Under the pieces are notes generated by a model. That model was not told the origin of the DNA. It did no database searches and was given only the letters and a program-made list of their open reading frames with translations. From Haliotis cracherodii (taxonomy: Eukaryota): DNA of 64,000 nt. The translations under genes and the position numbers were made by a program. Shown in pieces: positions 10,878 to 40,384 of this stretch; within the stretch, counting starts at the first letter, position 1, and every line of letters starts with the position of its first letter. The stretch covers positions 310,001 through 374,000 of the forward strand of contig NW_027266269.1 in assembly GCF_022045235.1 (NCBI RefSeq), written 5' to 3'.

Positions 10878-13800
10878 TCATTCAGTTGTGCGATTCTTCT
10901 TGGATTTAAAAAAACCTGAAAGCCTCTGTCCAGATGATCGTTTCATAGGTTTGGATGGTGGTAAATGTTCTATGATTTTGCTGCATCCTATTTTATGCGC
11001 AAGAGTCGCCACATCCTCCCCTGCATTGTTCGCTACTCTCAAATCTGCTCCTTGTTTTCTGAGAAATTCAAAAACATCAACTCTCTCATGCAACACTGAT
11101 GTCATGACAGGTGTCAAACCAACATTGTTTATGGCGTTGATATCAACCGAGTCTATGATGCATTTCACCATATCAAGCTGACCATGCTTAGTAGCAAGAT
11201 GTAGAAGAGTCTGTCTATTCTTGTCCACCAGAGTTTGGTCGGCACCACAGGACACCAAGAAAATATACACGTCCATATGGCCACCACACACTGCCCTCAT
11301 TAGTGGAGTCTGATCATCCCTGCCTCTGACGTCGATGTCAAAGTAGCCACTCTCTTGTTTCACAATGGCTCCCTTCCCACTTTGACCGACTACAAAGGTA
11401 GCATTATCATTCTCCAATGAAGTCGATGATTGTATGACATCCTTCGGTGCATTACCATCCAGAGGATCGTTTTGTCCACTGAACACTGATCTCGCTGCAT
11501 GCATTGATTTTGGCGAGTTGTTCTTTCCCCGACGATTTACGTCACGGAGTTTCACAAGACATTCGACAATAGCTGTGCTCCCACCCTGACATGCTGAATG
11601 TAGAACATTGTCATTGTAGTCATCAGTCAAAGTGAGGTCAGCATTCTGCTTCACAAGCAAATCGAACACGACCTTCCTTCCCGCCCATGCCGCAAACATG
11701 ACTGGTGTCCAGCCGTGTTTTCCAGAAGTATTGATGTCAATCTTTGATATCAGAATGTTCACAATGGAATAGTTCCCACCCTGACAGGCATGGTGTAAGA
11801 CAGTGTTATTATCATCATCAGTCAGTCTGATATTGGCCTTCTTTGACAAAAGTAGTTTAAACAGGGCTGGTTCTGCAATCAAGGCTGTGATCATTATTGC
11901 TGTTCTCCCGTGGCTTCCCATACAGTTGATATCAGTGCCTCGGCGTGCCAACAAATCTTTCACAATGAAAATATTTCCACCAAAACATGCTAAATGTAAT
12001 ACAGAATTGTTCTTGTCATCCCTTAATCTAATATCAGCCCCCTTTGACACAAGTAACTTGAAGACGCTCTCCATTCCTTTGTCAACTGCAAACATCACTG
12101 ACGTCCACCCGTAGTTTCCCCGAATGTTGATGTCGAACTTTGGCAGTAACAGTTCCACAATGGAGAGATTTCCTCCATGACATGCAAGATGGAGGAGGTT
12201 GTTGTTGTTGTCATCTTTCAGCGTGAAGTCCACTGTGTGTAGGAAAAGCGGAAATACATCCATATGTCCATGTACAGCTGCCTTCATCAATGGTGTCCAG
12301 CCATGTTTTCCCCGACTATTACATTCAAACTTTGGCACTAGTTGTAGTAACAGAGATGCATCACTAACGCGAGAAGCCACATGAAGGAGACTGTTGTTGT
12401 CATCATCGGTCAATGTGATATCAGCCTTTTTTGACATGAGAAGGTCGAAAATGTCCTTCCTCCCAGACAATAGTGCACACATAACCGGTGTCTGTCCATT
12501 GTTGCCTCGTGTATTGATATCTGTGTGGGGGAGCAGACATTCTACCATGGTCTTGTTTCCATACCAACATGCAAGATGAAGCACAGTGTTTTTGTGGGCA
12601 TCTGATAATTTGAAATCAATTTTGTTTTGTTTTATCCTTTCAAATGGCTTCCCTTTTTTGGTAAGATAATCTAAGATATCCTCCTTCCCAAATGCCACTA
12701 CACACAAAACTGGTGACCAGCCATTTACTCCTCGTCCATTAATATACTGATTCAGATACAAATCCGGAGAAAGATGTTTCTTGAGCGCTTTTTTTACATG
12801 TTTTACGGTGGACTTATGTCCATGTTGGCATGCCAAATGCAGTAAATTGTAGTTGTTGATGTCACATAAAGTGATGTCTGCTTTGTTTTTCAAAAGGATG
12901 TCAAAACATTCCTCCTGTCCAGAGACAACTGCATACATCACTGGTGTCCAGCCGTTCAACCCAGGCCTATTGATGTCACAGTGAGGAAGAAGTCGCTCAA
13001 GGATATTCTTGTTCCCAATGAAACAGGCATACTGGAGAATGTTATGCTTGATATCATCAGACAAGGAAGTTGGATCTGTGAACATATGATTTAATGTGTC
13101 AGATATTTCACTTCGTTTCCATATGTGATGCCAGATGTACATACTGAAAGCACCACTGACAATAGCATCTGCCATTCTGTCAGCAATTATTCCACTGTAG
13201 GCCTCTGAGAAAGGAATCATGAGCTGGTGTTCATTAACAGGAATACCATCGTCTTGCTGATCCTGTACGTGCTCAAGGAGGAACTTTATACCGCAATGTT
13301 TAATAACAAACACTGGTTTAATATTGAATAAGACCAAAGCACAGACATCATACATGATTGAATGGGAATATGCTGTTGTGTTTCCTTCTGTCAAAAATGT
13401 TCGAGAGAAGCTCCGGACAGCTGTAGCGACACCCTGTCTGGTTGATGTCTTCACAAGAGTTGTAACTGCCAAGAGGTGAGCCTCTAGGTCTTGGCGGGCA
13501 TCTTCAGATTCAAGTTGATTGTCTGTACTGGCACCTTTTGTCTTGAGTTGACTGATTGGGCAGGCACATTCCGTATCCAGTTGATTCGCTGGGCGGATAT
13601 CTTCAGTTTCCAGTTGATTGATGTTTATCTGACCTTCACACAGTACGATCAGAATGAGGGCAGCTGACTTGTCATCCAATGAGCTAATAATCTTTCGAAG
13701 TTGATTTGTGATGTAAAACATAGGTTTCTCGAAAAAACTCTCATGGTGCATTTGAAAGCCACAACAACTGGAGAAAAGTTTGCATTCTAGAGGAAAACCG

Positions 13801-16800
13801 ACAGTCGTTTCCTCATAAGCAAAAACATTCTTCACATCCATTTTACACTTATAGCGAAGTTTGTATGTCTGCCACAATGCTTTCTTCTCCTCCATGGTAT
13901 AAGTCAGTTTGACATCTGATGAACTTTTGAAAATATGTTGACCTCCTAGAGTTGACATTGCACTCTCAAGAGTGTTAGTTTCTGCAGTGAATATAACACA
14001 GATGTTTGGTTGATTCAGCTTTCTTTGTTCCTCTCTTTGTTCTTGCTGCAGACGCTGGTATCTTCTTTCTGATCTGGACTCGCACTGTTCCAGGTGCACG
14101 TGGAGGTCGTACAAAAAGCGCTCAAGACCGGTCAGATCCATATATGATCTGACTGTCTTACACATGTCATCAAATATGACACACACGTCTTTGCCTTTTT
14201 CTAGATAATCAGACAACTGGACTTTATAAGCATCTTCAACCAGCACCAGCTCATACCCCTGCTTCCTGTATTCAGCTCCCAGCATCAGGGCCATGGATGT
14301 TTTACCTTCTCCTGGAACACCGCTTATCGTAACATGGCCAAACGTCTCCAACTTTTCTTTAGCCTTCTTAAAGCTCTCAGTTTTAACAAACACACTTTGG
14401 ACATCCTTAATCTTCTGTTCCAGTGAACCTGTAAACGTTCATAAATAGTTGTAAACAAATCAAAACGAAGTGTGAAATTCAGCATCACCAGTTCAACTCG
14501 TTTGACTCTAATTTCATAGTTTGATAAAGATAAATTGTTTAGTTATAGTATAAGAGTGTCATCTCTGCATCAAATAGTATATTTATTATTATCTAAACAA
14601 AAGACCTCAGGTTACCTTTGTGGTACGTACGCGTGCATGTAATCATGCATGAAGGACATACCAGACCAATACTTCTCATTACTAATGTTGATAAAGGTAT
14701 TCAGTTCTTACCAGACGGCAAGAGCACAAAACTGCAGGGTGAATCAGCACCTCTCTCCAAAGCTGGTCAGGAAATAAAAGTATATGAATATGCTTCCACA
14801 ACTGAAATGCATATGTTGCAAAGACTTATATGCGAAGATAATATTAATTTGTTAACATATCGTTGTTATTGTTGTTCAGGGTATTCGGCTTACAGTCATA
14901 TATTCTGAAACATGTGTTCTGCACATATTCCACTCAAAAGGTTAGGGTAATTACATCACCAGTGAACATATTAATTATTAATACACAAGACCTTTAACCA
15001 GCATTATATTTACCATGAGATAATGTAAAGTTTACACGGAAAACAAATTAAACAATTGACATTCACTTTGTATTAGCTCACATGACAACATTCATTCATA
15101 GATACATACTTTATTTTATATGTATCCCATACTTACTGGCTTCACCTTCCTCTGCCATGAAAGGTTCTGAAACATATTAGATGTGATGGTTAGATGAAGC
15201 ATGTTTATCCCCCTCTGGATTGTGTAATCTCCATTTCGATATCTAAAGTACAACAAGTAATAGAACCAATACAAACACGCTAAACACCATGTTCAATATA
15301 CCGAGCTTGTATTGCTAATGTTATTGATGTAACTAAGCTGCGTAGATCACATACCAATACACACATAAGACACACGACAATGTCTCTTTCCAAGTCTATA
15401 GTGTCGTAAGCCCATAACTAGGAAACAGTTGATGTTTCTCAGGATTTACAATCTGCTGTTTCTTTCAATCAATGCTTGTGGTAGCAGACAATTTATCTGG
15501 AAATGCTGAATATTTATATTCCCTGTCTGAGATGAAGATAAATCAGCCCAACAAACATAATTATGATTTAGTTTCTTCTATCACAATTATTTTTAATGTA
15601 TGTCAAAAAATATCTCGTTTATACAAACCCAATGATAATACAGTGTCACCTTAAGTAGAATTAATGAGTTACGAGATGTATACTCACCATCTTCACCAGC
15701 TCTGTACCTGAAATAAACAAAATCGAGATTATGACAAATGTATAAATCAGCATGTCCGAATTGATAGTTTTAGAAATCAGGGGATTGCCACTTCATATGT
15801 GTACTTCGTTGTATTTAGATATATAATTTACTGCACATAGACGTAAGTGATGGTGATGAAGAAGACGTCCTGCCTCAGGTTATATTTCTGTATTACCTGG
15901 CAGTTGTTCTCCAGCATGGAAGTATCCCTGTCACTGCATCGAAAATCCCTGTGGTTTCTCCTCTTTTCCGTTTTTGTTTGTAAAGAAATCTGAAAATATG
16001 GTCAGTTATTGAGAAATATATGAACTGTAATATGTAAACGCTGTCATGTTGCAGCCCAATATATCAGTCCTCCTAACCTCCTTAAAACTAACCTAACACT
16101 TTATCTCACAATGCAAACAAAATAGTATTGAGTTTGCTGAGGTGAGGTGAAATGGAGTTTAACATCACGTTCAATATTACTGCACTTATATAGCGACGTG
16201 CATGCACGTGTGCATGCCGATTTAATAGTGCTAGACTACGAAGACAACATGCCGCAGTTTAACATGAATGCCCAACCCAGACACACTCCGAGCCATCAAG
16301 TCCTTGTTTAGCCCCTTAATGTCAAGCGCCTGGCAGGGTATAACAAGAACCTCAACATATTTTGGTATTACGCGACCGGGGATCAAAGCCCGTTCCTTCT
16401 GCTGTCTGGAAGGATGCTCCGCCACCAGCCCATGTTGTACAGATTCAGACTTCACCAATAAGTTCACAATACTGTTTTAATTTGTAATACACACATTTAG
16501 CAATAATCTGGACTCCATCTCCTTGGGTTAGGTACACACTTACAGTATGAACACCACCACAGCGAAGGTTAGGTACACACTTACAGTATGATCACCACCA
16601 CAGCGAGGGTTAGGTACACACTTACAGTATGAACACCACCACAGCGATGACAACCAGGATGACGAACACAGGGACAAGTATCGCAGCCGGGTCCGGTGTT
16701 TTCTCTGCGTTGGATTCACTCGGTGTTGTCGACGATGTGTCTGTGACAAAATACCGTCACGTAATATAAAGCATTAATATTTGCACATTTTCTTAACATA

Positions 16801-19286
16801 TATGAGTCTTAGGTTGTATTTGTACTTACATGTACTGGATTCCCCGGGAGGTGACGCCGTCGTCTCTGTACAGACATAAATACAGACAACGTCGTCATGT
16901 ATTCCAAACACTACTACAGTAAAGTATGACTAGTCCATCTTGATACACTCATGTTCTAGCTTGATTGTTTTAGAAAATCAGTACATGAATATACTTGTAT
17001 CTTATATCACATCATATTTATATCCAACTGCAGACACAGATAAAATACAGTAAAACATTGCATAACAGTGTTTATGAGTGTACAGCCCTGTTATATTTGC
17101 CTGATTGAAATGGAAACGACAAGACCCTTTCCATATTCAGTAGAAATATCTGCTACAAGCAGAGTCGGTTGTACAGTTCTTACTATATCAGGAGCATGTG
17201 TTTATGCATCACTATCAAATACTGATGAAGCCAGGTGGCCGCAAAAAGGTGGGCGTATCCTGCCCCACCAGTGGCAAATGTACCAGAAAACCCGTACACG
17301 AGTAAGGCTAAAATCCACACTCCTTTTGTTTATCTTTTGTTTACTCTTGAGATATAATCCAAACTTTAGCCACAATCAGCAATATTCCAGGTACATGACA
17401 GTGTTCTGTATATAATCGAGTCTGGACCAGACACACCAGTGTTTGACGATGATCCACGCACTTGGGTTACGATAACATGCATCAACCAAGTTTGCAAGCG
17501 GTTTGTTGTCTTGAACAACACAGGTTGCTGAAGATCTTTTTTTTTCAAATCCTTATGGGTTTAAGAGCTAAGCAATCAGTAGGTTTGCATATTCACTAAA
17601 AAGTTAAGAAACATCCTTAAAACCGAAATATAACTACCATACCTTCAGAAAGACCAAACAATGAATAACAAAGTGTTTTATTGATTCAGAGCAAGTTCAA
17701 TCACGCCGAGTTACCACCCTTGGCAGCATAAAACAGTCTAAAAGTCAGTCTCCATTTGGTGAACCACCCACAGTCAGTCAGAATCACATCATAAACAGAC
17801 TATCAATGTAAAACCTCGATTCCGATGTCATGAATGTTCACAGCAATGTCAGTATCGAATGTAGCCTCCACAAGCTCTAATCACGGCCTGACACAAGTGA
17901 AGATTTGAAAGAGGTTACTGAAAGCAGCTTGAGGAATTCGTTGCCATTCATCTGAAGGGCCCAAACTATGGATATCGCCATTTAACTAACACTGTTTTTT
18001 GTGTCAGAAAATATTAGTGGTCCCTAACTGATTTTGTTGAGCATTACAATAGCAAAACAATACAAAACCATTTTAGATATATCTCCCACAGCAGATCAGC
18101 ATCAACTATCACTAATTTGAATTAACTTGCTCTACCTGCTTCTGTAATAGAGAGATGTGCCGACCTGGCATTTTGCTTCTATCAGTTGCGTAAACTTCAG
18201 AGAAGTCTAACGCCAGGGGCGGTCGGGTAGCCTAGTGGTTAAAGCGTCCGCTCGTCACGCCGAAGACCCGGGTTCGCTTCCCGACATGGATACAAGGTGT
18301 GAAGCCCATTTCTGGTGTCCCCCGCCGTGATATTGCTGGAATATTGCTAAAAGCGGCGTAAAACCATACTCACTCACTCATTCTAACACCGTTGTTACAC
18401 CACACCCGTTAAAGGCAGAAACGTCCACACAAAAGTACACCATGAATATCATGCTGGGCATGCCCTCTCACATAATGCACGTGCATCACGTGACGTTTCA
18501 TAAGCTTTTTGAAGGGCCAAACCATCAAACTATGTATATCTTGTTGGGCTATCATTACATAACTAACCCTGTTTTTGTGTGAGAGAAAATATTAGTGGTC
18601 CTTACCTGTTTTTGTTGAGTATAAAATTGCCTGATTTGGAAGCAAGACAATATCATTAAACCGTTTTATATGTGAGAACTATATCCCACAGCAGACTGTT
18701 GTTAGTGCAGATGAGCACCATCTATCACACATTTGAAAAAACTTGTTTTCAAACCTCTAATACTGTTGCAAAAGTCCCCTGTGTAGTCTCCATCACAACC
18801 AAAGGTGCAGATGCCATTTTGGCGATTACAGGTGTTTCTCAAGCAGTTCTTGCTGCAGTGTTGATCACAGAGATCCTCAAACCACCCCGGCACACACCCC
18901 TCAGAGCACTTCCCTGTCTCCTTGTGGCAGTGTTTGAGGTTTCGCACTGGGTCAGGGATACAAGTCGAAGAACAATTTTTGCTGCAGTTTTCACCATACT
19001 TCCCCCATTCACACTGAGTCTGGCCATGTGTTTCCAATACTGAAAGGTTGAAAAATACGCAGTGAGGATAACGAAAGGAAGGAAACCGGACAGTATTATT
19101 TCACCTCAACTGATCAATGTTTTGGTACAGGGTAATGACAAAGAACAGTAGAATTTCAAGTACTGTACTCTACCGTGTGAAAAGAATGTATTGAGTTGGG
19201 AGATATGTTCAAATATGTGACAGCCGAAAAAAAACGTGTTCTCATTACTCACTGACTATCATCAGAATGGGGTAGAGTAGCTGCAT
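10878..19286 (-). CDS. Gene B: signal peptide - EGF ectodomain - S/T stalk - TM - STAND (nSTAND3-like) NTPase - ankyrin repeats, about 1404 aa
   Basis: Nine coding exons, all GT-AG with consistent phases and no stops: 19286-19253, 19039-18755, 16865-16830, 16740-16626, 15989-15897, 15707-15688, 15166-15137, 14762-14712, 14428-10878. Sum 4215 nt = 1405 codons. The last exon is in frame with the 1171-aa ORF. Confidence 0.82.
10965..13055 (-). other. About 19-20 ankyrin repeats in alternating LHxAC / TPxM pairs (gene B)
   Basis: Repeats of about 33 aa such as GWTPVMYAVVSG, NLLHLACHGGN, DINxRG and ADITLTDD; a degenerate stretch near 11350-11520. Confidence 0.95.
13750..14393 (-). other. STAND-class P-loop NTPase domain (nSTAND3-like) of gene B
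   Basis: N-terminal FVKTESF motif, Walker A GVPGEGKT (14321-14298), Walker B VCVIFDD and GFP (GxP) motif; downstream SHSIMYD in the helical region. Confidence 0.85.
18216..18380 (+). mobile_element. SINE family B
   Basis: Same consensus; TSD tctaac(g/a)cc. Confidence 0.85.
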
Positions 19287-19701: not shown

Positions 19702-20030
19702 ACCGTATTCGAGACAATAAGCGTCCAGGGCGCTCTCAAAGTTAGAAATAGGGGGCTCTTATTAGAATATTATATTGGTGAAAAACAACAGAGTTAAAAG
19801 ATCGTAAATTTCGTGGTTTATGCTGACAGCCTGAAATGTTTATATACGACAGATATATTTTTTTCCAGAATTTAATTTCCCATCATTATGAATGCATATA
19901 ACATACGTATTATACACGAATAAATAAGTCCTGTGTACATTGATCAACCGGAAGGTGTGCTAATTGGGATTCTTCGCTAGCCCATATATTAGAAAATATC
20001 GCCGTGGGCGCTTATTAGAGCGGGACGCTT
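19702..20030. mobile_element. Possible non-autonomous DNA transposon (MITE) end, interrupted by a gap
   Basis: TACCGTATTCG..ATAAGCG terminus, with the reverse-complement motif GCGCTTATT just before the gap. Confidence 0.35.
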
Positions 20031-20245
20031 NNNNNNNNNNNNNNNNNNNNNNNNNNNNNNNNNNNNNNNNNNNNNNNNNNNNNNNNNNNNNNNNNNNNNN
20101 NNNNNNNNNNNNNNNNNNNNNNNNNNNNNNNNNNNNNNNNNNNNNNNNNNNNNNNNNNNNNNNNNNNNNNNNNNNNNNNNNNNNNNNNNNNNNNNNNNNN
20201 NNNNNNNNNNNNNNNNNNNNNNNNNNNNNNNNNNNNNNNNNNNNN
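20031..20245. other. Assembly gap
   Basis: Run of N. Confidence 1.
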
Positions 20246-20984
20246 CCTCACATATAATTAATCTTAACCCAAGATAACTCTGGTAGAATTCCCTAACTTC
20301 AGTACATATGGGTGCGTCTAGCTGGGCATGCAGAAGCTGTCTGTTAATCTATGTAGACCGATGTCGTGGTATTTTATACCTGACAGTGTCTAGATTTGAT
20401 AACCTCTGAGTATTTCAATGAGGTCAGTTTAATATTAGAACTGCTAGTTAGTATCAGTGCTGCTAACATGTGTAGATGCGCCTGTTTAGATATACTCACA
20501 AATTATCCTGAACAAAGGACATCCTTACATTGCCAAGTCGCTTGGCTCATTATAGCTCATTTATCACAACACCAGTCAAACGCAGCGGTATTCCCTTATC
20601 AAAAGCTATTACGTGAACCTTGAATTGCCTGGCCACCGATAACGCATGGTGCATCCATGTCGACACGACCTTTCCTCTCTTGGTTGAGCGTTGATAAGCC
20701 GTCCTTCCCCAGCCTGTTTAACGATCACTAGATCAAAGCTGTCTTTATACTTTAGTCCTTTAAAACCTCACTCAGCAACAAATGATTGTGGCATGCAAAT
20801 AATCAAGTCTGGACAGAAAACCCAGTGATTGACATCATGAGCATCGATCTACGCATTCGCATTCCAATTCAGCGAGCCTGATCACCCAGCCCCATTAGTC
20901 GCCTCTTACGACAAGCAGTTCCCTTTTTGGGGCTGCTGAGAATTTATCTTATCCCGGAACTCACGCATCGAATCAAAACGTGTG

Positions 20985-22544: not shown

Positions 22545-23550
22545 CAACCCCTACCTCAACCCCGCATCCCGCACCTCCCTACCTCATCACCGCAGCCCCT
22601 ACCTCAACCCCGCAACCCCCACCTCAACCCTTCACCCCCTGCCTCAACCCTGCACCTCCCCACCTCAACACCACACCACCTACCTCAACCCCGCACCCCT
22701 GCCTCAACCCCGCACCTGCCCATCTCAACCCTGCACCTCCCCACCTCTACCCTGCCAACCCAACCTCAACCCCGAACCCCCAGCCTCAACCCCGCACCTC
22801 CCTACCTCATCCCCGCACCCCCTACCTCAACCCCGCAACCCCCACCTCAACCCTTCACCCCCTGCCTCAACCCTGCACCTCCCCACCTCAACACCACACC
22901 ACCTACCTCAACCCCGCACCCCTACCTCAACCCCGCACCCCTGCCTCAACCCCGCACCTGCCCATCTCAACCCTGCACCTCCCCACCTCAACCCCTCACC
23001 CCCCTGCCTCAACCCCGCACCTTCCCATCTCAACTCCGCACCCCCTCCCTCAACCCAGCATCTGCCCACCTCAATCCCGCACCCCTACCTCAATCCAGCA
23101 CCTCCCCAACTCAATCCCGCACCCCTACTTCAACCCCGCACCCCCACCTCTACCCTGCACCCCCACCTCAACCCCGCACCCCCTACTTCAACCTCGCACC
23201 CCCACCTCAACCCCGCTACCCCACCTCTACCCCGCACCCCTGCCTCAACCATGCACCTCCCCACCCCTAACCCGCACCACCTACCCCAACTTTGCACCCC
23301 CTGCCTCAAACCCTTTCCCCCTGCCTCAACCCCGCACCCCTTCCCTTAACCTTGAACTTCCACATGCGCATACCTAGTCAAACAGCACCTTCCAACTTCA
23401 ACCCCGCACTTCCAACCTTAACCCCGCACCTGCCTGCCTCACCCTGCACTTCCACATTTTCATACTTCCTCAAACGGCACTGACCTAACTCAACCCCGCA
23501 CCCCTCTCACCACACATCCTTACCTCCACCCCGCAAAGCGCACCTCAGCA
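22545..23550. repeat. C-rich minisatellite, unit about 19-22 bp
   Basis: Unit approximately cctcaaccccgcacccct(a/g); open in all three + frames. Confidence 0.9.
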
Positions 23551-27830: not shown

Positions 27831-28961
27831 AACTAGCAAAGAAATAAACTCAATCTAATTGCTCATCGTTAAAGCCAATCGTGAACATAAGTGTTCGAAT
27901 GTGTCTCAGGAACCCATGCTTATCGGAGGAGGTGACTAACGGGATCTAATTATCATGCTCCGTGACTTGGTGGATGCATGTCATCGTTACCGATATACCG
28001 ATGTTCATGATGTCAACCACTGGATATTCTGTTGCAGACTCGCATCAACCTTCATTATCACATTATACATGAACATACACGAGAGCAGACCGGCATCCAG
28101 ACACTGTTGTGTCAATGTCTGTACACCATGTGCAATGTATTACACTATCAGGAACATCGTTGAAGACTGTGCCAATGGTTCTCACTTTTGTTTCCAGAAT
28201 GAACTTCCTACCCGTATAGGGCTAGAATACATTGGAGTGTATCTATTCTTAAGTTACTTTGTCACATCACCCTTCAAAGCAAGTAAATAGACGTACCACA
28301 CAGCAATTACATAAGTTGTGTTGGTTTAATGGATACACACATGTTTTTCATCAAAGTTTATAGAGAAATGATAACAAACATCAGCATGTGTGCAGTGTCG
28401 AAAGTTTATTACTATAATGTACAAATATATCACACCCGATCTTTTTCAACCTTTTAAGAAAATTAAGAATTAGTGTACACTACTTGCAAATTTAAGGCAC
28501 ATTAGTACAAACACATACCCCACTGAGTCAAAGCGACACAAGTCCCTTTTCATCAAGGTGCTTCAGCCATGATGCTTCTCGTCTTTCGTGTATTCTATAC
28601 ACGTTAAATGATAACAACAACTTTGGTTTCATTGCTGATAGACCCATGTATTGTCAACTGGTAGTAACGATGTATACTGTGTAGGGTAGAGGCATCAACG
28701 TTCATGACATCATCATCATTGTCACCATATATACGTCACATGTTTTTAACGTTGCTGTTGTTGTATAGTGCTATGTACTTTGGGAACAGGGTCAGCTTAA
28801 TGAGGGCGGAATAACAAACAGAGGATCACCACTGATAAAACCGACGGGGGTGTGCTGGCAAAACAACGACATCAACAACTAGCGGGCCTGGCGCTTGAAA
28901 AAAGTAGAATTGATAGCTCAATAGACAGTGAACAGTTGTGTATAGATAAGTCATACAACAT

Positions 28962-30056
28962 TAAATAGGTTACATGTAATCAGCGGTCACAGGAACACAT
29001 ACAACATAAAATAGGTTACATGTAATCAGCGGTCACAGGAACACATACAACATAAAATATGTTACATATAACCAGCGGTCACAGGAACACATACGACATA
29101 AAATAGGTTACATATAATCAGCGGTCACAGGAACACATACGACATAAAATAGGTTACATATAATCAGCGGTCACAGGAACACATACGACATAAAATAGGT
29201 TACATGTAATCAGCGGTCACAGGAACACATACAACATAAAATAGGTTACATGTAATCAGCGGTCACAGGAACACATACAACATAAAATATGTTACATATA
29301 ACCAGCGGTCACAGGAACACATACGACATAAAATAGGTTACATATAATCAGCGGTCACAGGAACACATACGACATAAAATAGGTTACATATAATCAGCGG
29401 TCACAGGAACACATACGACATAAAATAGGTTACATGTAATCAGCGGTCACAGGAACACATACAACATAAAATAGGTTACATGTAATCAGCGGTCACAGGA
29501 ACACATACAACATAAAATAGGTTACATACAATCAGCGGTCACAGGAACACATACAACATAAAATATGTTACATATAACCAGCGGTCACAGGAACACATAC
29601 AACATAAAATAGGTTACATACAATCAGCGGTCACAGGAACACATACAACATAAAATAGGTTACATGTAATCAGCGGTCACAGGAACACATACAACATAAA
29701 ATATGTTACATATAACCAGCGGTCACAGGAACACATACGACATAAAATAGGTTACATATAATCAGCGGTCACAGGAACACATACGACATAAAATAGGTTA
29801 CATATAATCAGCGGTCACAGGAACACATACGACATAAAATAGGTTACATGTAATCAGCGGTCACAGGAACACATACAACATAAAATAGGTTACATGTAAT
29901 CAGCGGTCACAGGAACACATACAACATAAAATATGTTACATATAACCAGCGGTCACAGGAACACATACGACATAAAATAGGTTACATATAATCAGCGGTC
30001 ACAGGAACACATACGACATAAAATAGGTTACATATAATCAGCGGTCACAGGAACAC
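28962..30056. repeat. 46-bp minisatellite, about 24 copies, beginning at the gene C stop codon
   Basis: Unit cataaaataggttacatgtaatcagcggtcacaggaacacatacaa. Confidence 0.95.
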
Positions 30057-33000
30057 AATGGCGGGACCCTTCTCGCCATCGATAACGTCATAATAGGCAT
30101 GATTCGAATGACGGTTAGTATTAAGTGTATCTCCCTGTACTGTAGGTAAGTACTGCAGATACACCAACTCCTCTTGCTGCATCTGATCCTGGTGCTCCTC
30201 CTGTTCCCTGCAACATGGAGATATGCATATATTTAGGATATTTGTGCATAAACTACATTTTCACATGCGTACATGAGCTATTATCGTTTCGTCACCAGAA
30301 ACCCGCGAAGACCCGGGTAAAATAGGTTTTTAGCAACCCATTTTGCAATAAAAGGCGACTATGCTTGTCGTAAGAGGCGACTAATGGGATCGGGTGGTCA
30401 TGCTCTCTGATGCATGTCATCGTATCCCAATTGCTTGGATCGATGCTCATGATATTAATCACTGGATTCTCTGGTCCAGACTAAGTTTTTTACAGACCGC
30501 TGTCATATAACTGGAATATGAAACAACAACCAAACCAACCAATCGTCACCAGAAGCATAATCTTACATTTCTGATCTGTTAGAATGCGTCGAAACGTACA
30601 CTAAATCTGCAATCATATACGTTAGACAGATATTCCAGTGTTGCTTTACACATTCAAGAACATCAGTGATTAAAGTGTTGGGAATCATTGAAGCTACCAA
30701 CCGATCCTGCTTCTCTCAGAAAAGGATCGACCTTTCCCCCACCTTGTGGTATATTATGATGCATGTTGGTTCCTAATCTCTTCTCGTAATCATATCAGAA
30801 ACTACTGACACTAACGAACTTGATGCTTATTAAAATGTACATAATCATTATCAATTCAATAGATCTTCCAGCTACCCATGCTTGACTATGCCTGTCGTAA
30901 GACGCGACTAACGGGATCGGGTGGTCAGGCTCTCTGACTTGGTTGATGCATGTCATCGTATCCCAATTGCGTGGACCCATGCTCATGATGTCAATCACCG
31001 GATTTTCTGGTCCAAACTCGGTTATTTATAGACCGCCGTCATATAGCTGGAATATTTCTGACTTCGGCATTAAACAACAAACAAACAAACACACATTAAC
31101 CATAAGTGAATATTGCGCAATAATAACCCAGTCAGGGAGTTAACTGTCTTCTCTTAGGTGTGATAACAATTTCCTCCATTGAACAGTTTAACTAAATTAC
31201 GTTGATTTGATCAGTGGGGAAATGAAGATTTGACGTGTATGAATTACTAGCATATCCTGACAAAAACCCAAAATAAGTCATAGTGGTGTGAATAGTAAGT
31301 ATGGTTTGAAGCATGAGTCAAGTAAAATAAACATACAACACACTACAGGGGTCGTGTAGTGACTGTTACCATAACACTGCGACGAACTCACCTTTGTTTG
31401 GGGAAACGCTTGCAGTAACAGAGACAGAGTGTCAGCAAGATGCCCGACACAAAAAGTAGCATTGATGCCAACAGCCAAGTCAGCACACTGCCTGTCTTCT
31501 GATCGTCATTCCCATCTGGCAAAAAGACGAGCGACTAAATATTTTAAAATGTTTAATGAACTAGTCATTAGTGTCATGCACACTAGATCAGCTCTTGTTC
31601 CATGTCCTTGAGCAAACAAATAGCGAATATATTACGTTCGCCTTGATGAAGAGCATGGTCATACAGCGCAAGGAACAAGTTTACATTTTAAAATATTAAG
31701 GTACATTACACATGTGCGTGTCACACGTGTAGATAAGGTGCCTGTGTGGTGTATTTTTTAACATCGCACTAAGCGATATGAATGCTCCCGTTGTAAAACG
31801 ACGGCCTGCACGCAATCGAGTCCAGTGATTTGTGATGTGCAACTCTCTGTGTACCATGACATACTTGCTTTCGAGCCTGACATCCTGATCCATTTAGGTG
31901 TCCTTACTTCCAGCATAAGTTGCTGGGAGCACATGCATAGTGATGTACTGTATTGAGGAAGTAACTGAGTTGAGCAGTTTTACAAGTGTGACATTAGAAA
32001 CTGAGGATTTAGCATTTTGAACAAATTCATTTATACATTCATCTATCCAGCAGGTGTCTGCATAAGGGGAATGTACACCTTCGTAGTGTCGTGGTACACG
32101 TCCTTGTCATCTGATCAGAAAAACAAGAACATCCAGACATACTACACATGTATGGGTGTAGTTTTGTCGAGCATCCAGGTATACGACCATGCATACAGTC
32201 TCGGGAAGCCACGTGTCTTACATGTTTAGAGATACATAAGGAGGGACATCCAGGTATACAACCATGCATACAATCCCAGGTAGTCACGTGTCTTACATGT
32301 TTAGAGATACATAAGGAGGATCATCCAGGTATACAACCATGCATACAATCCCGGGTAGCCACGTGTCTTACATGTTTAGAGATACATAAGGAGGAACATC
32401 CAGGTATACGACCATGCATACAATCCCGGGTAGCCACGTGTCTTACATGTTTAGAGATACATAAGGAGGAACATCCAGGTATACAACCATGCATACAATC
32501 CCGGGTAGCCACGTGTCTTACATGTTTAGAGATACATAAGGAGGAACATCCAGGTAAACAACCATGCATACAACCCCGGGTAGCCACGTGTCTTACATGT
32601 TTAGAGATACATAAGGAGGATCATCCAGATATACGACCACGCATACAATCCCGGGTAGCCACGTGCCTTACATGTTTAGAGATACATAAGGAGGAACATC
32701 CCGGTATACAACCATGCATACAATCCCGGGTAGCCACATGTCTTACATGTTTAGAGATACATAAGGAGGGACAACTTGGAGTGTGAGTGAGTGAGTTGGG
32801 TTTAACACCACTTTTTAACAGTAGTTCAGTTATATCACGGCGTGTCAGCTTAATGTGGGAGGAAAGCCCGAAGTGATGCAGATCTCAGACGTTTACCACT
32901 TTGGTGAAACCAACGAGCACGGGGATGGTGCTGACAAACCTTGAAACATAATCGAGGTGAACCGGAATTCGAACCCACAATCATAGGTTTCTGGCATACC

Positions 33001-34879: not shown

Positions 34880-36720
34880 CAGCCTCAATGTGACATCTGT
34901 GTTGTGTGATTGTATATGGGGCATGTGATCTATGTCATGCGGCATGTGGTATGAGATGCGTGAAATGTGATATGTGCCATGTGTCATATGGTATGTGATG
35001 TTTAAATTGTGGCATGCTATATTTGGTATTTGAAATTTGCCATGTGATATATGAAATGTGGCATGTGATATGTGGTATGTGATATGCGGCATGTTATATC
35101 TGGTATTTAAAATTTGGTATGTGATATCTGGTATATGAAATATGGTATTTGAAATGTTATCTGTGTCATGAGTTATGACAAATCTGTTTTTGTGTGCGAT
35201 ATTTAAGTGCCGTGTGACATGTGCTATTTAGTAGGTGTCATGTGTCGTGTCACATCTGACATTATTACGTGATATGTGGAACGTGATATCGTGCATGTCG
35301 TTTGTATCATGTGTCTTGTTTCATGTGGTATGTGTCACGTGGCATATAACATGCGTCCGTTGACGTGCCCCAAGTATTATCTGACATGGTATGTGGCAAT
35401 TGACATGTGGTATATAATATGCGGTATAGGATATGTATGGCAAGTGTCATGTTAGGTGGGATATTCTCACTTGGTATGAGACATATGCCATTTGATATGT
35501 GTGATATGAGAAATTTCTTATTTCTCATGTGATATGAATAATGCGTCATTCATGATGAGATGTGTTCTATTTGATATGTGGTGTGTACATGTGTCATGTG
35601 ATTTGTGATATGAGGTGTGTGATATGCACCATGTGGTTTGTGATGTTTGTCCTGTGTCATGCGGATGAGATGCTTGAATGTGATATCTGGTATTTGAAAC
35701 GTGACATGTGATATGTGATATGTGAAATGTGGCATGTGAACTATTGTATTTGAAATGTGGAATGTGATATGTGATGTGCGAAATATGGCATGTGAATTAT
35801 GGTATTTGAAATGTGGAATGTGATATGTGATGTGTAACACATGGCACGTGATATCTGGTATTTGAAATGTGGTATATGATATGTGATGTGTGAAAAATGG
35901 CATGTGATATCTGGTATTTGAAATGTGGCATGTGATATGTGATGTGTAAAACATGGCACGTGATATCTGGAATTTAAATGTGGAATGTGATATGTGATGT
36001 GTAAAATTTGACATGTGATATCTGGTATTTGAAATATGGAATGTGATACGTGATGTGTAAAACATGACATGTGATATCTGGTATTTGAAATATGGAATGT
36101 GACATGTGATGTGTAAAATATGGCATGCAATATCTGGTATTTGAAATGTGGTATATGATATGTGATGTGTGAAAAATGGCATGTGATATCTGGTATTTGA
36201 ATTATGGAATGTGATATGTGATGTGTAAAACATGGCACATAATATCTGGTATTTGAAATGTGGAATATGATATGTGATGTGTGAAATATGGCATGTGGTA
36301 TCTGGTATTTGAAATGTGGAAAGTGATATGTACATGTGAAATGTTGCATGTGATATGTGGCATGTGAAATGTGAAATGTGGCATGTCAAATGTAAAATGT
36401 GATATTTGCCATGTGGCATGTGCTATGTGGTATGTAAAAATGTGGCATATGATATGTGATATATGAAATTGTGGCAGGTGCTATGTAATATATGAAATTG
36501 TGGCATATGAAAGGTGGCATGTGATGTGTAATATGTCAACTGTGATATCTGTTATTTGAAATATGGTATTTTAAACTGTTATCTGTGCAATGTGTTCTGG
36601 CATAGCTGTTATATGTGTGATATATCATGTGGCATATAAGTGTTGTGTGATATCTGACATTGCTGCTTGATATGTGGAACGCGATATGTCTCATGCTTCT
36701 AGTGGCATGTGGCATGTGAC
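34880..36720. repeat. Degenerate heptamer-based repeat with a 56-bp core array (about 35700-36320)
   Basis: atgtga(t/a/c) heptamers; 56-bp period gtgatatctggtatttgaaatgtgg... Confidence 0.85.
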
Positions 36721-38916: not shown

Positions 38917-39612
38917 CATGTCTCGCACTACATATAGATTAGTGTATGTAACACTATTCCCGATGCATAGCTACATAATATACCATGGCTAATGTCTCTC
39001 ACTACATATAGATTAGTGTATGTAACACTATTCCCGATGCATAGCTACATAATATACCATGGCTCATGTCTCTCACTACATATAGATTAGTGTATGTAAC
39101 ATTATTCCCGTTGCATAGCTACATAATATACCATGGCTCATGTCTCTCACTACATATAGATTAGTGTATGTAACATTATTCCCGTTGCATAGCTACATAA
39201 TATACCATGGCTCATGTCTCTCACTACATATAGATTAGTGTATGTAACATTATTCCCGAATGCACAACTACATAATATATCATGCCTCATGTCTCTCACT
39301 ACATATAGATTAGTGTATGTAACATTATTCCCAAATGCACAACTACATAATATATCATGCCTCATGTCTCTCACTACATATAGATTAGTGTATGTAACAT
39401 TATTCCCGTTGCATAGCTACATAATATACCATGGCTCATGTCTCTCACTACATATAGATTAGTGTATGTAACATTAATCCCGAATGCACAACTACATAAT
39501 ATAGCATGCCTCATGTCTCTCACTACATACAGATTGGTGTATGTAACACTATTCCCGATGCACAACTACATAATATATCATGCCTCATGTCTCTCACTAC
39601 ATATAGATTGGT
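38917..39612. repeat. 74-75-bp minisatellite, about 9 copies
   Basis: Unit catgtctctcactacatatagattagtgtatgtaacattattcccg... Confidence 0.95.
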
Positions 39613-40384
39613 GTCTGAGAGCTTAACATACAAGATGGACATTCAACACATTCCAAACAGTGTACCTTTATATGCAAACATGACATGCTATATAAATATT
39701 CCGATTGCACCCATCAAACACAATATTACATTTGAGAATTGGTTGATGACTATTTAGTTTTTGTGTCCAGACTGTTATATGCATGTGTTGTATTTATATC
39801 TGGCGTTTGTTTTATGATAGACAGAAAACTTTACTTTACATATACATATGACACTGCACATCTATTTATAATGCAACCTTGTAAACTGTCAACTCAACGT
39901 GCAGCAAATGTATTGTCTATCATTGGTTGTTATCCCTGATTGTTGCAGTGACAACAGTCATAGATTTGTTCACTCTATTTATAACATTACCAAACGTACT
40001 CTCAAATATGACCCGGACAACCGAAACACTCGGCACCGTAGTTTCTGTCACGGTTTTTCATTCCTAATAATTGCAGTGAAAGGAGAGCAATGCTATTCAA
40101 CTGTAATGAGTTCATAGATTGACAGAGACGGTGAAAACATTTGTCGGCGACAGATTCATGTGATATGTGTTGACATGCATTTCTGTTGTCATGGAAACGA
40201 AAACAAGACTGTTTTGTGAATTGTGTTTTATTTCTAGAAGCAAAAGTAGAGTCATGAAAAGAAAATAATATGATATAATGACGGTTGAGTTGATAGTGAT
40301 ATTAAAGGGGACAAAACCGTTTAAAATATCTGAAGTAAGACTGGCAGTGACAAATATCATTCTCCCAAATTCGAGGCGCATGTG

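What the first reader, a model, noticed from the sequence alone, without database searches (positions are those of the whole stretch)
10878..19286. Candidate transmembrane NLR-like receptor: EGF ectodomain - TM - STAND NTPase - ankyrin repeats in one gene
Seen: the 1171-aa STAND-ankyrin ORF opens at a GTG just after a splice acceptor (tttacag|14428). Eight upstream exons with canonical GT-AG sites chain into it with exact phase matches (1,1,1,2,2,1,1,1) and no stops. The product reads signal MQLLYPILMIVILETHG, a Cys-rich EGF block, an S/T/P stalk, TM AAILVPVFVILVVIAVVVFILFLY, stop-transfer KQKRKR, a linker, then NTPase (GVPGEGKT / VIFDD / GFP), a helical domain and about 19-20 ankyrin repeats. 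Known: STAND/NLR proteins are normally cytosolic, with C-terminal repeats as sensor and an N-terminal effector, while MEGF10/Draper/CED-1/SCARF-type EGF receptors normally signal through short Tyr tails. Inference: here the effector position is occupied by a membrane anchor plus extracellular recognition module. Extracellular ligand could drive STAND oligomerisation, or cytosolic sensing could cluster the ectodomain. I know of no characterised receptor with this architecture but cannot search to confirm novelty.
Basis: partly seen in the sequence, partly recalled or inferred. Interest (0 to 1): 0.93.

Follow-up and report, generated by a model that had tools for sequence, protein, structure and literature searches.

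The report
Membrane-anchored STAND-ankyrin receptor gene, abalone
This black-abalone gene really does join a small EGF-like outer domain and a membrane anchor to an NLR-like NTPase switch with ankyrin repeats; it belongs to a family of about 40 such genes, but RefSeq already models it and similar membrane-bound NLR-like receptors are known from oysters and sea cucumbers.

Summary
The RefSeq model XP_071098489.1 of Haliotis cracherodii is 100% identical to this chain with the 36-nt cassette exon 3 skipped. RNA-like contig runs cover the exons only, end exactly on exon borders, and join exons 5, 6 and 7.

The product reads: signal peptide, 14-Cys double EGF-like module, S/T/P stalk, TM helix, KQKRKR, a 75-aa linker, nSTAND3 P-loop NTPase with helical domains, then about 19 ankyrin repeats.

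- **Family:** at least 41 STAND exons in the genome have the Cys-rich exon 3-23 kb upstream on the same strand. Of these, 35 lie in the first 3.6 Mb of one contig. Four Haliotis species carry the architecture, and it is consistent with a single origin inside a larger cytosolic nSTAND3-ankyrin family.
RefSeq already models the gene. Oysters have Cys-rich-ectodomain/TM/STAND proteins (Kaur 2021). Sea cucumber AjNLRC4 (Ig/TM/NACHT) is a characterised membrane NLR.
- **Mechanism is untested.** Outside-in activation and a membrane-tethered cytosolic sensor both remain open. A cytosolic 1207-aa isoform is modelled for the 99% twin gene.

It is a new variant of a known kind, of moderate interest.

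The parts
19253..19286 (-). Exon 1: ATG at 19286 and most of the signal peptide (MQLLYPILMIV). In isoforms of the twin gene the exon begins at an acceptor at 19314, and an upstream exon that I did not locate supplies MVSTSL.
   Evidence: Sequence; chain; isoform N-termini.
18755..19039 (-). Exon 2: end of the signal peptide (predicted cleavage THG|QT), then an 86-aa module with 14 invariant Cys forming two laminin-type EGF-like units, with two N-x-S sequons.
   Evidence: Alignments A1 and A2. 5 of 25 paralogous copies hit PF00053, best E 3.6e-7. Weak profile hits to SCARF1, laminin and Tie2. Contig ends at 19039 and 18754.
16830..16865 (-). Exon 3: 36-nt cassette exon in the S/T/P stalk. It is skipped in the RefSeq model of this gene and included in isoforms of the twin.
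16626..16740 (-). Exon 4: rest of the S/T/P stalk and most of the TM helix (AAILVPVFVILVVIAVVVFI).
   Evidence: An X2 contig of 185 nt lies exactly on 16626-16740, with 47 and 23 further letters beyond it. Hydropathy.
16526..16647 (.). 41-bp tandem repeat, 3 copies, 96% matches. It triplicates the exon 4 end and donor site (CTGTAAGTGT), giving two spare donors in the intron.
   Evidence: sequence. Joint 16604>16650 in X1-X3.
15897..15989 (-). Exon 5: end of the TM helix (LFLY), stop-transfer KQKRKR, and the juxtamembrane linker with the conserved GILPCWRTT.
   Evidence: Contigs end at 15989. Conserved in paralogues.
15688..15707 (-). Exon 6: 20-nt linker micro-exon. An alternative acceptor 6 nt downstream is used in one RNA-like contig.
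   Evidence: Joint 15897>15167 with 13 letters between (tables 5 and 5c).
15137..15166 (-). Exon 7: linker. It holds the ATG of MAEEGEA, the start of the 1207-aa cytosolic isoform modelled for the twin gene.
14712..14762 (-). Exon 8: linker (TLERGADSPCSFVLLPS).
   Evidence: Depth in X1-X3 only in this bin, with zero in the flanking intron bins.
13899..14428 (-). Exon 9, first part: end of the linker, then the nSTAND3 nucleotide-binding domain. Motifs are Walker A GVPGEGKT, Walker B VIFDD, and the strand ICVIFT.
   Evidence: Pfam; alignment A3; PADLOC PDC-S73 E 4e-13. Contigs end at 14426-14429 with 93-155 letters beyond.
12984..13898 (-). Exon 9, helical domains after the NBD. They hold GFPLxCKL (GLPL-like) and FSHSxxYDxC (MHD-like), separated by a disordered insert of 11-aa repeats (xRPDSQLxTKx) whose length varies between paralogues.
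   Evidence: A3. AF2 model pLDDT 72.9. Foldseek hits: SAMD9, Apaf-1, Avs5, plant resistosomes, NLRP9.
10878..12983 (-). Exon 9, about 19 ankyrin repeats in an alternating two-type pattern, with a roughly 60-aa non-repeat insert, a basic tail and the stop codon.
   Evidence: Pfam; repeat register.
18216..18384 (.). tRNA-derived SINE inside intron 2. It is not part of the gene product.
   Evidence: Depth up to 6.8e5 and many loose ends at 18215/18380; sequence.

Best explanation
What is shown. This is a real, intact, transcribed gene of the black abalone Haliotis cracherodii. It encodes a type I single-pass membrane protein with these parts in order:
- a cleavable signal peptide;
- one 86-aa, 14-cysteine module made of two laminin-type EGF-like units of the MEGF10/Draper/SCARF1 kind;
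- a mucin-like Ser/Thr/Pro stalk;
- a fully hydrophobic TM helix and a polybasic stop-transfer;
- a roughly 75-aa linker with no known domain;
- an nSTAND3 P-loop NTPase with helical (HD/WHD-like) domains;
- about 19 ankyrin repeats.
It is one of at least about 40 paralogues, 35 of them in the first 3.6 Mb of contig C6. The layout is consistent with a single acquisition of the EGF-TM head inside a larger, cytosolic, Haliotis-expanded nSTAND3-ankyrin family. Heads and bodies have since had mosaic histories (gene conversion or exon exchange).

What is inferred. It works as a membrane-anchored STAND switch of innate immune or non-self surveillance. My preferred version, about 0.4, is outside-in. 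Multivalent engagement of the small ectodomain at the cell surface or in a phagosome brings the cytosolic NTPase modules together. This favours nucleotide exchange and oligomerisation. The ankyrin solenoid acts as an autoinhibitory and partner-recruiting platform. This resembles the way the membrane NLR AjNLRC4 and EGF-type engulfment receptors couple particle binding to cytoskeletal or signalling responses.

Confidence. The 0.72 below is for the gene, its architecture, its family and the broad STAND-receptor class. The direction of signalling is far less certain.
For: Gene and architecture:
- The exon chain has correct phases and no stop.
- RefSeq P0203 is identical to the chain without E3.
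- Exon-limited depth, contig ends on exon borders and an E5-E6-E7 joint appear in three RNA-like runs, while run X23 covers introns too.
- E9 has no in-frame ATG before the P-loop, so it needs upstream exons.
- 36 of 43 Haliotis homologues from four species have the CxWGxYG motif, a TM helix and Walker A in the same order.

Topology:
- Hydrophobic N-terminus with T-x-G before the predicted cleavage site.
- Two N-x-S sequons.
- A stalk that is 60% S/T/P.
- KD 3.6 for the TM helix, followed by KQKRKR.

STAND module:
- Pfam nSTAND3.
- Conserved Walker A and B, GFPL and H..D motifs.
- Foldseek hits to SAMD9 (8.9e-6), Apaf-1, EfAvs5, plant resistosomes and NLRP9.

EGF-like module:
- PF00053 hits in 5 of 25 alignable paralogous exons.
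- Weak profile matches to SCARF1, laminin and Tie2.
- Atlas neighbours carry EGF_laminin / EGF_PEAR1L.
- NCBI names relatives MEGF10-, draper-, CED-1- and SCARF1-like.

Family:
- 41 of 86 STAND loci have a Cys-rich exon less than 30 kb upstream on the same strand, at a median of 6.7 kb.
- The paired loci fall on one side of a tree branch with support 93/90.
- Every homologue whose organism I looked up, down to about E 1e-16, is Haliotis.

Immune-type evolution:
- Relaxed dN/dS of 0.45-0.52 in the cytosolic parts.
- Discordant dS between head and body exons.
- Variable tandem-repeat inserts.

Precedents for function: AjNLRC4 (PMC8699970) and the oyster receptor-like architectures (PMC8195603).
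Against: - No experiment or expression profile ties the gene to immunity. The runs used are contigs labelled RNA only by guess. The E7-E8-E9 junctions are supported by contig ends and exon-limited depth, not by a listed bridging joint.
- The ectodomain is the most constrained part (dN/dS 0.29 against 0.45-0.52). It is tiny, with two EGF-like units. That fits a constant anchor or partner-binding head at least as well as a pathogen sensor.
- Variability in the ankyrin repeats is not concentrated on canonical binding-surface positions, so no module is marked as the diversifying sensor.
- A cytosolic isoform starting in exon 7 is modelled for the twin gene.
- The window's own ectodomain fails Pfam EGF thresholds, and its AF2 model is poor (pLDDT 56).
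Confidence: 0.72

Rival explanations
1. Membrane-tethered cytosolic sensor (inside-out or localisation model). The ankyrin solenoid senses a cytosolic ligand, as in classical STAND proteins. The EGF-TM head only places the switch at the plasma or endosomal membrane. Alternatively, the head is clustered on the surface after activation, as an adhesion or eat-me signal.
For: - In STAND proteins the C-terminal repeats are normally the sensor and the N-terminal part is the output (established knowledge; Avs5 text).
- The cytosolic paralogues share the same NTPase-ankyrin body without any head.
- The head is the most constrained region (dN/dS 0.29) and the body is faster (0.45-0.52).
- The same head module occurs in secreted six-module proteins that could be partners.
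Against: - Ankyrin variability is not focused on binding-surface positions.
- The TM helix has no polar residues that would suggest a pore-type output.
- The precedents with an extracellular domain are read as outside-in: AjNLRC4 from experiments and the oyster family by its authors' hypothesis.
Confidence: 0.3
2. The fused model is mainly an annotation or read-through artefact. The biologically relevant product would be the 1207-aa cytosolic STAND-ankyrin protein from the ATG in exon 7, and the EGF-TM exons would belong to a separate short MEGF10-like gene.
For: - RefSeq models a 1207-aa isoform starting at MAEEGEA for the 99% twin gene.
- Short EGF-TM proteins with brief tails exist in Haliotis (P0212, 235 aa).
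- The RNA label of the runs is a guess.
Against: - An RNA-like contig joins E5 (stop-transfer) through E6 to E7.
- The linker exons are in frame and conserved in paralogues 60-80% identical and in four species.
- 41 loci keep the head exon upstream on the same strand.
- E5 to E8 contain no stop, and the frame runs on exactly into E9.
Confidence: 0.06
3. Not an immune receptor. It would be a lineage-specific adhesion or membrane-cytoskeleton adaptor, or a developmental receptor, in which the ankyrin repeats tether partners and the NTPase regulates turnover.
For: - Ankyrin repeats commonly link membrane proteins to the cytoskeleton (established knowledge).
- AjNLRC4's NACHT binds actin.
- EGF-TM-ankyrin variants without a STAND domain exist (P0210, P0214, P0217).
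- No region has dN/dS above 1.
Against: - Roughly 40 clustered, fast-evolving, recombining paralogues confined to one genus is the signature of conflict or recognition families rather than housekeeping adaptors.
- The nSTAND3 family includes the Avs5 anti-phage defence NTPase.
Confidence: 0.12

Closest known systems
RefSeq Gnomon models of Haliotis cracherodii: XP_071098489.1 (this gene) and XP_071098481-88 (99% twin gene). Further members occur in H. rufescens, H. rubra and H. asinina.
   Same: The same gene. P0203 is identical to the window's exon chain without exon 3. The paralogues share the whole architecture.
   Different: These are computational models only, named 'uncharacterized protein' or 'PP6 regulatory ankyrin repeat subunit-like'. 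I found no paper on them.
AjNLRC4 and AjNLR-new, membrane NLRs of the sea cucumber Apostichopus japonicus (PMC8699970, PMC13133943)
   Same: A STAND-class NTPase built into a membrane receptor with an extracellular recognition domain. AjNLRC4 has been shown experimentally to be a membrane pattern-recognition receptor that drives phagocytosis.
   Different: It has an Ig ectodomain rather than an EGF-like one, NACHT rather than nSTAND3, two TM segments and no ankyrin repeats. It is from a different phylum and shows no sequence relationship here.
Crassostrea virginica receptor-like TRADD-N expansion (Kaur, Iyer, Burroughs and Aravind 2021, PMC8195603)
   Same: A marine-mollusc lineage-specific expansion of about 50 proteins. 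They have a constant Cys-rich ectodomain, a TM helix and cytosolic immune modules that can include STAND NTPases and ankyrin repeats. The authors read them as receptors for external stimuli.
   Different: In oysters a DED and a TRADD-N domain follow the TM helix. The abalone linker is about 75 aa with no DED, TRADD-N or Death hit. The C-terminal part is fixed (nSTAND3-ANK) rather than variable.
Bacterial Avs5 (SIR2-nSTAND3-TPR) anti-phage defence proteins
   Same: The same Pfam NTPase family, PF20720. EfAvs5 is a Foldseek neighbour of the model. Both have the tripartite STAND logic with C-terminal helical repeats.
   Different: Avs5 is cytosolic, with a SIR2 NADase effector at the N-terminus and TPR/Sel1 repeats. 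It has no membrane or extracellular part.
MEGF10 / Draper / CED-1 / SCARF1 EGF-type engulfment and scavenger receptors
   Same: A single-pass type I layout with laminin-type EGF-like cysteine spacing. NCBI names relatives of the head after them. There is a weak profile match to SCARF1.
   Different: Those receptors have an EMI domain and many EGF repeats, and short tails with NPxY/YxxL motifs. Here there are only two EGF-like units and a 1200-aa STAND-ankyrin cytosolic part.
SAMD9 and Apaf-1 (structural neighbours of the NTPase region)
   Same: Best Foldseek matches, at 8.9e-6 and 1.4e-4: a P-loop NBD followed by helical domains.
   Different: TM-scores are only 0.3-0.37 and identity is 11-14%. 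The flanking domains differ. This is a class-level resemblance only.

Membership tests
STAND NTPase, nSTAND3 (PF20720) | Profile match above the curated threshold | tested here: met
   56.5 bits against a cut-off of 27.2, E 3.4e-15, profile positions 1-74 of 155. Paralogues P0046 and P0064 match positions 1-154.
STAND NTPase, nSTAND3 (PF20720) | Walker A and Walker B motifs conserved | tested here: met
   G30, K31, T32 and D75, D76 are invariant in 21 paralogues (GxxGEGKT; hhhhDD).
STAND NTPase, nSTAND3 (PF20720) | NBD followed by helical and winged-helix domains, with the fold resembling solved STAND proteins | tested here: met
   AF2 model pLDDT 72.9. Foldseek hits to SAMD9, Apaf-1, EfAvs5, wheat and tomato resistosome NLRs and NLRP9 at E 9e-6 to 9e-4, but with low TM-scores of 0.27-0.37. 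GFPL and H..D motifs are conserved.
STAND NTPase, nSTAND3 (PF20720) | Nucleotide-dependent oligomerisation | not testable with these tools
   Needs biochemistry. No complex prediction was run.
NLR in the strict sense (NACHT or NB-ARC plus LRR) | NACHT or NB-ARC nucleotide-binding domain | tested here: not met
   No NACHT or NB-ARC hit at E <= 0.1; only nSTAND3 and a weak RuvB_N hit.
NLR in the strict sense (NACHT or NB-ARC plus LRR) | C-terminal leucine-rich repeats | tested here: not met
   The repeats are ankyrin (Ank_2 E 3e-97) and there is no LRR hit.
EGF-like domain (laminin-type, PF00053) | Profile match | tested here: inconclusive
   The window's copy has no EGF hit better than EGF_STAB1-2 at E 3.5. 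5 of 25 alignable paralogous exons hit PF00053, best 3.6e-7. The family profile matches SCARF1 at E 0.36, laminin at 0.92 and Tie2 at 3.9.
EGF-like domain (laminin-type, PF00053) | Six-cysteine units ending in C-x8-C with G-x2-G | tested here: met
   14 invariant Cys with spacing C-x3-C-x10-C-x6-C-x3-C-x8-C and C-x3-C-x4-C-x6-C-x3-C-x8-C. C4-x3-C5 replaces the usual C-x-C.
EGF-like domain (laminin-type, PF00053) | EGF fold with three disulfides per unit | tested here: inconclusive
   The AF2 model of the module has pLDDT 55.8, too poor to search with.
MEGF10 / Draper / CED-1 receptors | N-terminal EMI domain, many EGF repeats, and a short tail with NPxY/YxxL motifs | tested here: not met
   There is no EMI hit. 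Only one two-unit module is present. The cytosolic part is 1200 aa of STAND-ankyrin.
Type I single-pass membrane protein | N-terminal signal peptide, one TM helix, positive-inside | tested here: met
   Rule-based only. The features are a hydrophobic MQLLYPILMIVIL, a THG|Q site, a single KD peak of 3.6 at aa 136-160 of the 1404-aa chain, KQKRKR after it, and sequons and an S/T/P stalk before it. SignalP, DeepTMHMM and localisation were not available.
Oyster receptor-like TRADD-N family (Kaur 2021) | DED and NCOA6-clade TRADD-N domain after the TM helix | tested here: not met
   The linker between TM and NTPase is about 75 aa. No DED, Death or TRADD-N hit at E <= 0.1 in P0203.
Ankyrin repeat protein | Tandem 33-residue ankyrin repeats | tested here: met
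   Ank_2, Ank, Ank_3, Ank_4 and Ank_5 are all far above threshold. 11 repeats were found by a strict motif, and about 19 follow from the 33-residue period.

The most novel reading that the evidence does not exclude
Abalone may carry about 40 surface receptors in which an extracellular EGF-like head is wired through one TM helix directly to a cytosolic STAND oligomerisation switch. Binding outside the cell would then trigger NTP-dependent assembly of a resistosome- or inflammasome-like platform at the inner membrane face. Heads and bodies reshuffled among paralogues would generate combinatorial specificities. Secreted six-module proteins built from the same head unit could act as soluble partners or decoys. 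That would be a signalling logic different from both TLRs and cytosolic NLRs.
Probability: 0.3. Interest if true: 0.8.

Novelty: new variant of a known kind. Interest (0 to 1): 0.55.

Why it matters
If the full-length protein is made and sits in the membrane, it puts the STAND switch directly under an extracellular domain. That switch is the engine of NLRs, Apaf-1 and bacterial Avs systems. Only a few such cases are on record: sea cucumber AjNLRC4 and the oyster TRADD-N receptors. This one is the simplest, because nothing but a 75-aa linker lies between the membrane and the NTPase.

A family of about 40 genes in one 3.6-Mb cluster, with mosaic heads and bodies, offers a natural series for asking which end senses and which end signals.

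The host is an endangered abalone. The family may therefore be worth testing as a disease-resistance locus, but no evidence here links it to disease.

It also shows that annotation names such as 'PP6 regulatory ankyrin repeat subunit B-like' hide this architecture.

Tried and rejected
- **PDB sequence searches (ectodomain):** exon 2 and profile A1 matched nothing. Profile A2 gave only weak matches.
- **PDB sequence search (NTPase):** profile A3 gave only generic P-loop matches and a designed repeat protein.
- **AF2 of the ectodomain:** pLDDT 55.8. I did not use the model for a fold search because it would be meaningless.
- **Ankyrin surface test:** entropy at DARPin binding positions 2, 3, 5, 13, 14 and 33 was 1.19 against 0.95 elsewhere. 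The most variable positions (26, 17, 25) are ordinary surface sites, so the result is inconclusive.
- **Region-wide NG86 dN/dS:** no region exceeds 1. Site models such as PAML were not available.
- **Other cytosolic partners of the head:** I looked for Death, TIR or kinase domains. Only nSTAND3-ANK or ANK alone appeared among long and short relatives.
- **The architecture outside Haliotis:** the nearest non-Haliotis STAND relatives have E about 1e-11 (scallop Ylistrum) and 1e-9 (gastropod Gigantopelta) and lack a TM helix. The database may under-sample vetigastropods.
- **Other long ORFs in the window (53956-56388, 59248-63982 and others):** these are translations of minisatellite arrays. Their Pfam hits have no valid stretch.
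- **Earlier scan notes:** none near the window.
- **Own-genome DNA search:** it did not list the self match or the twin among its 36 scored candidates, so the length of the duplication was not measured.
- **The joined spliced model:** it was assembled only inside local scripts, to check frame and hydropathy. Whole-protein scans used the database protein P0203, and exon-wise searches used references.
- **The N stretch near 20030-20250:** left untouched.

Full report
**Organism and locus.** The window is contig C6:310001-374000 of a Haliotis cracherodii (black abalone) assembly. The identification rests on the RefSeq proteins that match it. The finding lies on the minus strand between 10878 and 19286.

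**Observation.**
- The 1171-aa ORF 10878..14393 begins at a GTG 35 nt after the acceptor tttacag|14428.
- Pfam finds nSTAND3 (PF20720, 56.5 bits, cut-off 27.2) at ORF residues 2-77, and ankyrin repeats through the C-terminal 700 residues.
With exons 19286-19253, 19039-18755, 16865-16830, 16740-16626, 15989-15897, 15707-15688, 15166-15137, 14762-14712 and 14428-10878, every intron is GT-AG. My first trial used a donor 9 nt too early in exon 2 and gave 1401 aa.
- The single strong hydrophobic segment has a Kyte-Doolittle 19-residue mean of up to 3.6. It spans the exon 4/5 junction and is followed by KQKRKR.
- Exon 9 has no in-frame ATG before the P-loop; its first Met is residue 34, inside the NTPase. 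It therefore cannot stand alone. It must take its start from exon 1 or from the MAEEGEA ATG in exon 7.

**Is the fused gene real?** Four lines of evidence say yes.
- *RefSeq.* Protein XP_071098489.1 (P0203, 1392 aa) is residue-for-residue identical to the window's chain with the 36-nt exon 3 skipped.
- *Twin gene.* A 99% identical copy at C6:2.45 Mb, in the opposite orientation, has isoforms of 1420, 1408 and 1404 aa with the same layout. It also has a 1207-aa isoform that starts at MAEEGEA (P0202).
- *Sequencing runs.* Three runs (X1-X3) look like transcriptome assemblies, though the label is a guess. They have depth in the bins holding exons 1, 2, 3, 4, 5, 7, 8 and 9, and X2 in the exon 6 bin. 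They have no depth in non-repeat intron bins. X23, probably DNA, covers everything.
  - Their contigs stop exactly at 16626 and 16740 (exon 4), 19039 (exon 2 acceptor), 15989 (exon 5 acceptor), 18754 (one base past the exon 2 end at 18755) and 14426-14429 (exon 9 acceptor). They carry 23-155 further letters that do not lie next door.
  - One contig joins 15897 to 15167 through 13 letters. These are exon 6 entered at an acceptor 6 nt downstream.
  - So a transcript holding the stop-transfer exon runs on into exon 7. The exon 7-8-9 junctions are supported by exon-limited depth and contig ends, not by a listed joint.
- *Homologues.* 36 of 43 homologues from H. cracherodii, H. rufescens, H. rubra and H. 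asinina carry the CxWGxYG motif, one TM helix and Walker A in the same order. Their linker peptides are conserved (GILPCWRTT, AGEDE..MAEEG, SPCSF, SGSLEQKIKD).

I put the chance that the fusion is an annotation artefact at about 6%.

**The ectodomain.**
- The window's own exon 2 peptide hits no Pfam EGF model; the best is EGF_STAB1-2 at E 3.5. It matches nothing in the PDB by sequence.
- The exon is hugely repeated in the genome, with at least 150 scored copies among 1557 first-look candidates.
- An alignment of 25 copies down to 41% identity shows 14 invariant cysteines. The spacing is C-x8-C, then C-x3-C-x10-C-x6-C-x3-C-x8-C, then C-x3-C-x4-C-x6-C-x3-C-x8-C. That is two six-cysteine EGF-like units after a half unit.
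- Five of these 25 copies hit PF00053 (laminin EGF) on their own, best E 3.6e-7.
- The family profile matches SCARF1 (E 0.36), laminin and Tie2 weakly.
- The protein-language-model atlas places it beside mollusc clusters carrying EGF_laminin and EGF_PEAR1L (score 0.93; a lead only).
- NCBI names relatives MEGF10-, draper-, CED-1- and SCARF1-like.
- AlphaFold on the module was poor (pLDDT 56) and I did not use it.

I accept 'EGF-like, laminin/MEGF type' by transitive homology. The protein is not a MEGF10/Draper/CED-1 family member: it has no EMI domain, only two units, and a quite different tail.

The same module also occurs six times in tandem in secreted proteins without a TM helix (P0204), and in front of ankyrin repeats without a STAND domain (P0210, P0214, P0217). 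An earlier first-reader note in this scan about an EGF-TM-ankyrin family elsewhere in the genome agrees with that. I checked it only through these proteins.

**The cytosolic part.**
- No DED, Death or TRADD-N domain lies between the membrane and the NTPase. The linker is about 75 aa with no Pfam hit.
- In 21 paralogous NTPase regions the invariant residues include Walker A (G30, K31, T32), Walker B (D75, D76), a VIFT strand, GFPLxCKL and FSHxxxYDxC. The last two sit where NB-ARC proteins have GLPL and MHD. That correspondence is my inference.
- Between them lies a disordered insert of 11-residue repeats (xRPDSQLxTKx). It ranges from absent to more than ten copies among paralogues.
- An AlphaFold model built on this alignment has pLDDT 72.9. 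Foldseek against the PDB gives human SAMD9 (8.9e-6), Apaf-1 (1.4e-4), EfAvs5 SIR2-STAND (1.9e-4), wheat and tomato resistosome NLRs, and NLRP9, mixed with generic AAA+ proteins. TM-scores are low, 0.27-0.37.
- nSTAND3 is the NTPase family of bacterial Avs5 anti-phage proteins (bioRxiv 10.1101/2025.07.08.663546). PADLOC gives PDC-S73 at E 4e-13.
- It is therefore a STAND NTPase, but not NACHT or NB-ARC. With ankyrin instead of LRR it is NLR-like only in the broad sense.

**Family and history.**
- The NTPase region matched at least 86 loci in the genome.
- 41 of them have a Cys-rich exon less than 30 kb upstream on the same strand: 35 on C6 between 0 and 3.6 Mb, and 6 on C26. The median distance is 6.7 kb. 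None of the loci on C9, C12, C13, C56, C67 or C78 does. This is a lower bound, since only 150 head exons were scored.
- In a maximum-likelihood tree of 21 NTPase regions, the 14 head-associated genes fall on one side of a branch (support 93/90; 96% of bootstrap trees). This is compatible with a single acquisition of the head. The root is unknown.
- The cytosolic paralogues have N-terminal regions of 150-575 aa with no Pfam domain.
- In a search of 1.84 billion representatives, every hit whose organism I looked up, down to about E 1e-16, is Haliotis. The first others are a scallop (about 1e-11) and the gastropod Gigantopelta (about 1e-9), and they lack a TM helix.
- Pairwise Nei-Gojobori estimates over 57 paralogue pairs give median dN/dS of 0.29 for the head exon, 0.47 for the NBD, 0.52 for the helical domains and 0.45 for the ankyrin region.
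- For the same gene pair, dS of the head exon is often several times that of the body. Window against L072 gives 0.49 against 0.07-0.17. One pair has an almost identical ankyrin region (dS 0.003) but dS 0.21 in the NBD. So heads and bodies have mosaic histories, through gene conversion or exon exchange.

**How it most likely works.**

*Shown:* a type I membrane layout by rule-based criteria, a STAND NTPase with intact catalytic motifs, and an ankyrin solenoid.

*Inferred:* a membrane-anchored STAND switch used in non-self or damage surveillance.
- I favour outside-in activation, at about 0.4. Multivalent engagement of the small head clusters the cytosolic NTPase modules and promotes nucleotide-dependent oligomerisation, and the ankyrin solenoid acts as an autoinhibitory and recruiting platform. 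My reasons are:
  - the two precedents with an extracellular domain are read that way, AjNLRC4 from experiments and the oyster family by its authors' hypothesis;
  - EGF-type heads of this kind belong to engulfment and scavenger receptors;
  - the head is combined with nothing but this body.
- The main rival, at about 0.3, keeps the classical STAND polarity. The ankyrin part senses in the cytosol, and the head only anchors or is clustered as an output. The stronger constraint on the head (0.29) and the existence of headless paralogues and a headless isoform fit this at least as well.
- A test for diversification at the canonical ankyrin binding positions was inconclusive. A pore-type output is unlikely, because the TM helix has no polar residue.

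**Comparison with what is known.**
I found no paper on these abalone proteins, but the kind is known.
- Kaur et al. 2021 (PMC8195603) describe about 50 Crassostrea virginica proteins. They have a constant Cys-rich ectodomain, a TM helix, DED plus TRADD-N, and a variable C-terminus that can hold STAND NTPases and ankyrin repeats. The authors propose that external stimuli trigger them.
- Chen et al. [quoted passage not shown] A 2026 JBC paper (PMC13133943) adds a second membrane NLR.
- The abalone family differs in the head (a double EGF-like module), the NTPase clade (nSTAND3), the absence of any adaptor domain between membrane and NTPase, the fixed ankyrin tail, and its restriction to Haliotis.
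- I therefore rate it a new variant of a known kind, already present in RefSeq as uncharacterised models.

**Verdict.** Interest is moderate, 0.55. The result is of value mainly to people working on the evolution of NLR-like receptors and on mollusc immunity.

Noticed in passing
window 10878-19286 against G000:C6:2450418-2456501 (+): A 99% identical twin of the whole gene lies about 2.1 Mb away in inverted orientation on the same contig. Its head exon is 96% identical and its NTPase region 99%. RefSeq gives the twin five isoforms and this copy one. It could be a very recent inverted segmental duplication or an assembly duplicate. The RNA-like contigs cannot tell the two copies apart.
   Followed up: partly
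window 16526-16647: A 41-bp unit that holds the last bases of exon 4 and its GTAAGT donor is repeated three times (96% matches). Two in-register spare donors therefore sit in the intron. RNA-like contigs show a 45-nt skip (16604>16650) across the array.
   Followed up: partly
window 12984-13898, and alignment A3 columns 296-440: An 11-residue tandem repeat (xRPDSQLxTKx) lies between the GFPL-type and H..D-type motifs of the NTPase. It expands from none to more than ten copies among paralogues (L052, L054). AF2 predicts it as disordered. This variable-length hinge sits at a key place in a STAND switch.
   Followed up: partly
G000:C40:43627-46668, and protein P0204: The same 14-Cys module occurs as arrays of five or six exons about 650 bp apart. 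They encode secreted proteins with six modules and no TM helix, named CED-1-like by NCBI. These are possible soluble partners or decoys of the receptor heads.
   Followed up: partly
(paralogue pairs on C6): Synonymous divergence of the head exon and of the big exon disagree strongly within the same gene pairs. One pair (L087/L090) has a nearly identical ankyrin region (dS 0.003) but dS 0.21 in the NBD. This is evidence of gene conversion or exon exchange within the cluster.
   Followed up: partly
window 18216-18384: A tRNA-derived SINE sits in intron 2. Its summed contig depth reaches 6.8e5 in the RNA-like runs and 1e7 in X23, so it is one of the most abundant repeats of this genome.
   Followed up: no
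window 22568-23341, 28952-30057, 32172-32773, 35678-36401, 38917-39614, 44850-45714, 54088-56417, 58629-63996: The 44 kb beyond the gene (window 20000-64000) holds many minisatellite arrays, with units of 28/56, 46, 74-75, 81 and 86 bp. One array spans 5.4 kb, and the same 75-bp unit appears at two sites. The long ORFs there (up to 810 aa) are translations of these arrays, not genes.
   Followed up: partly
window 15137-15166 (exon 7) and P0202: The twin gene has a modelled 1207-aa isoform starting at MAEEGEA. It would give a soluble STAND-ankyrin protein from the same locus as the membrane form. Whether this copy makes it, and from which promoter, is unknown.
   Followed up: partly
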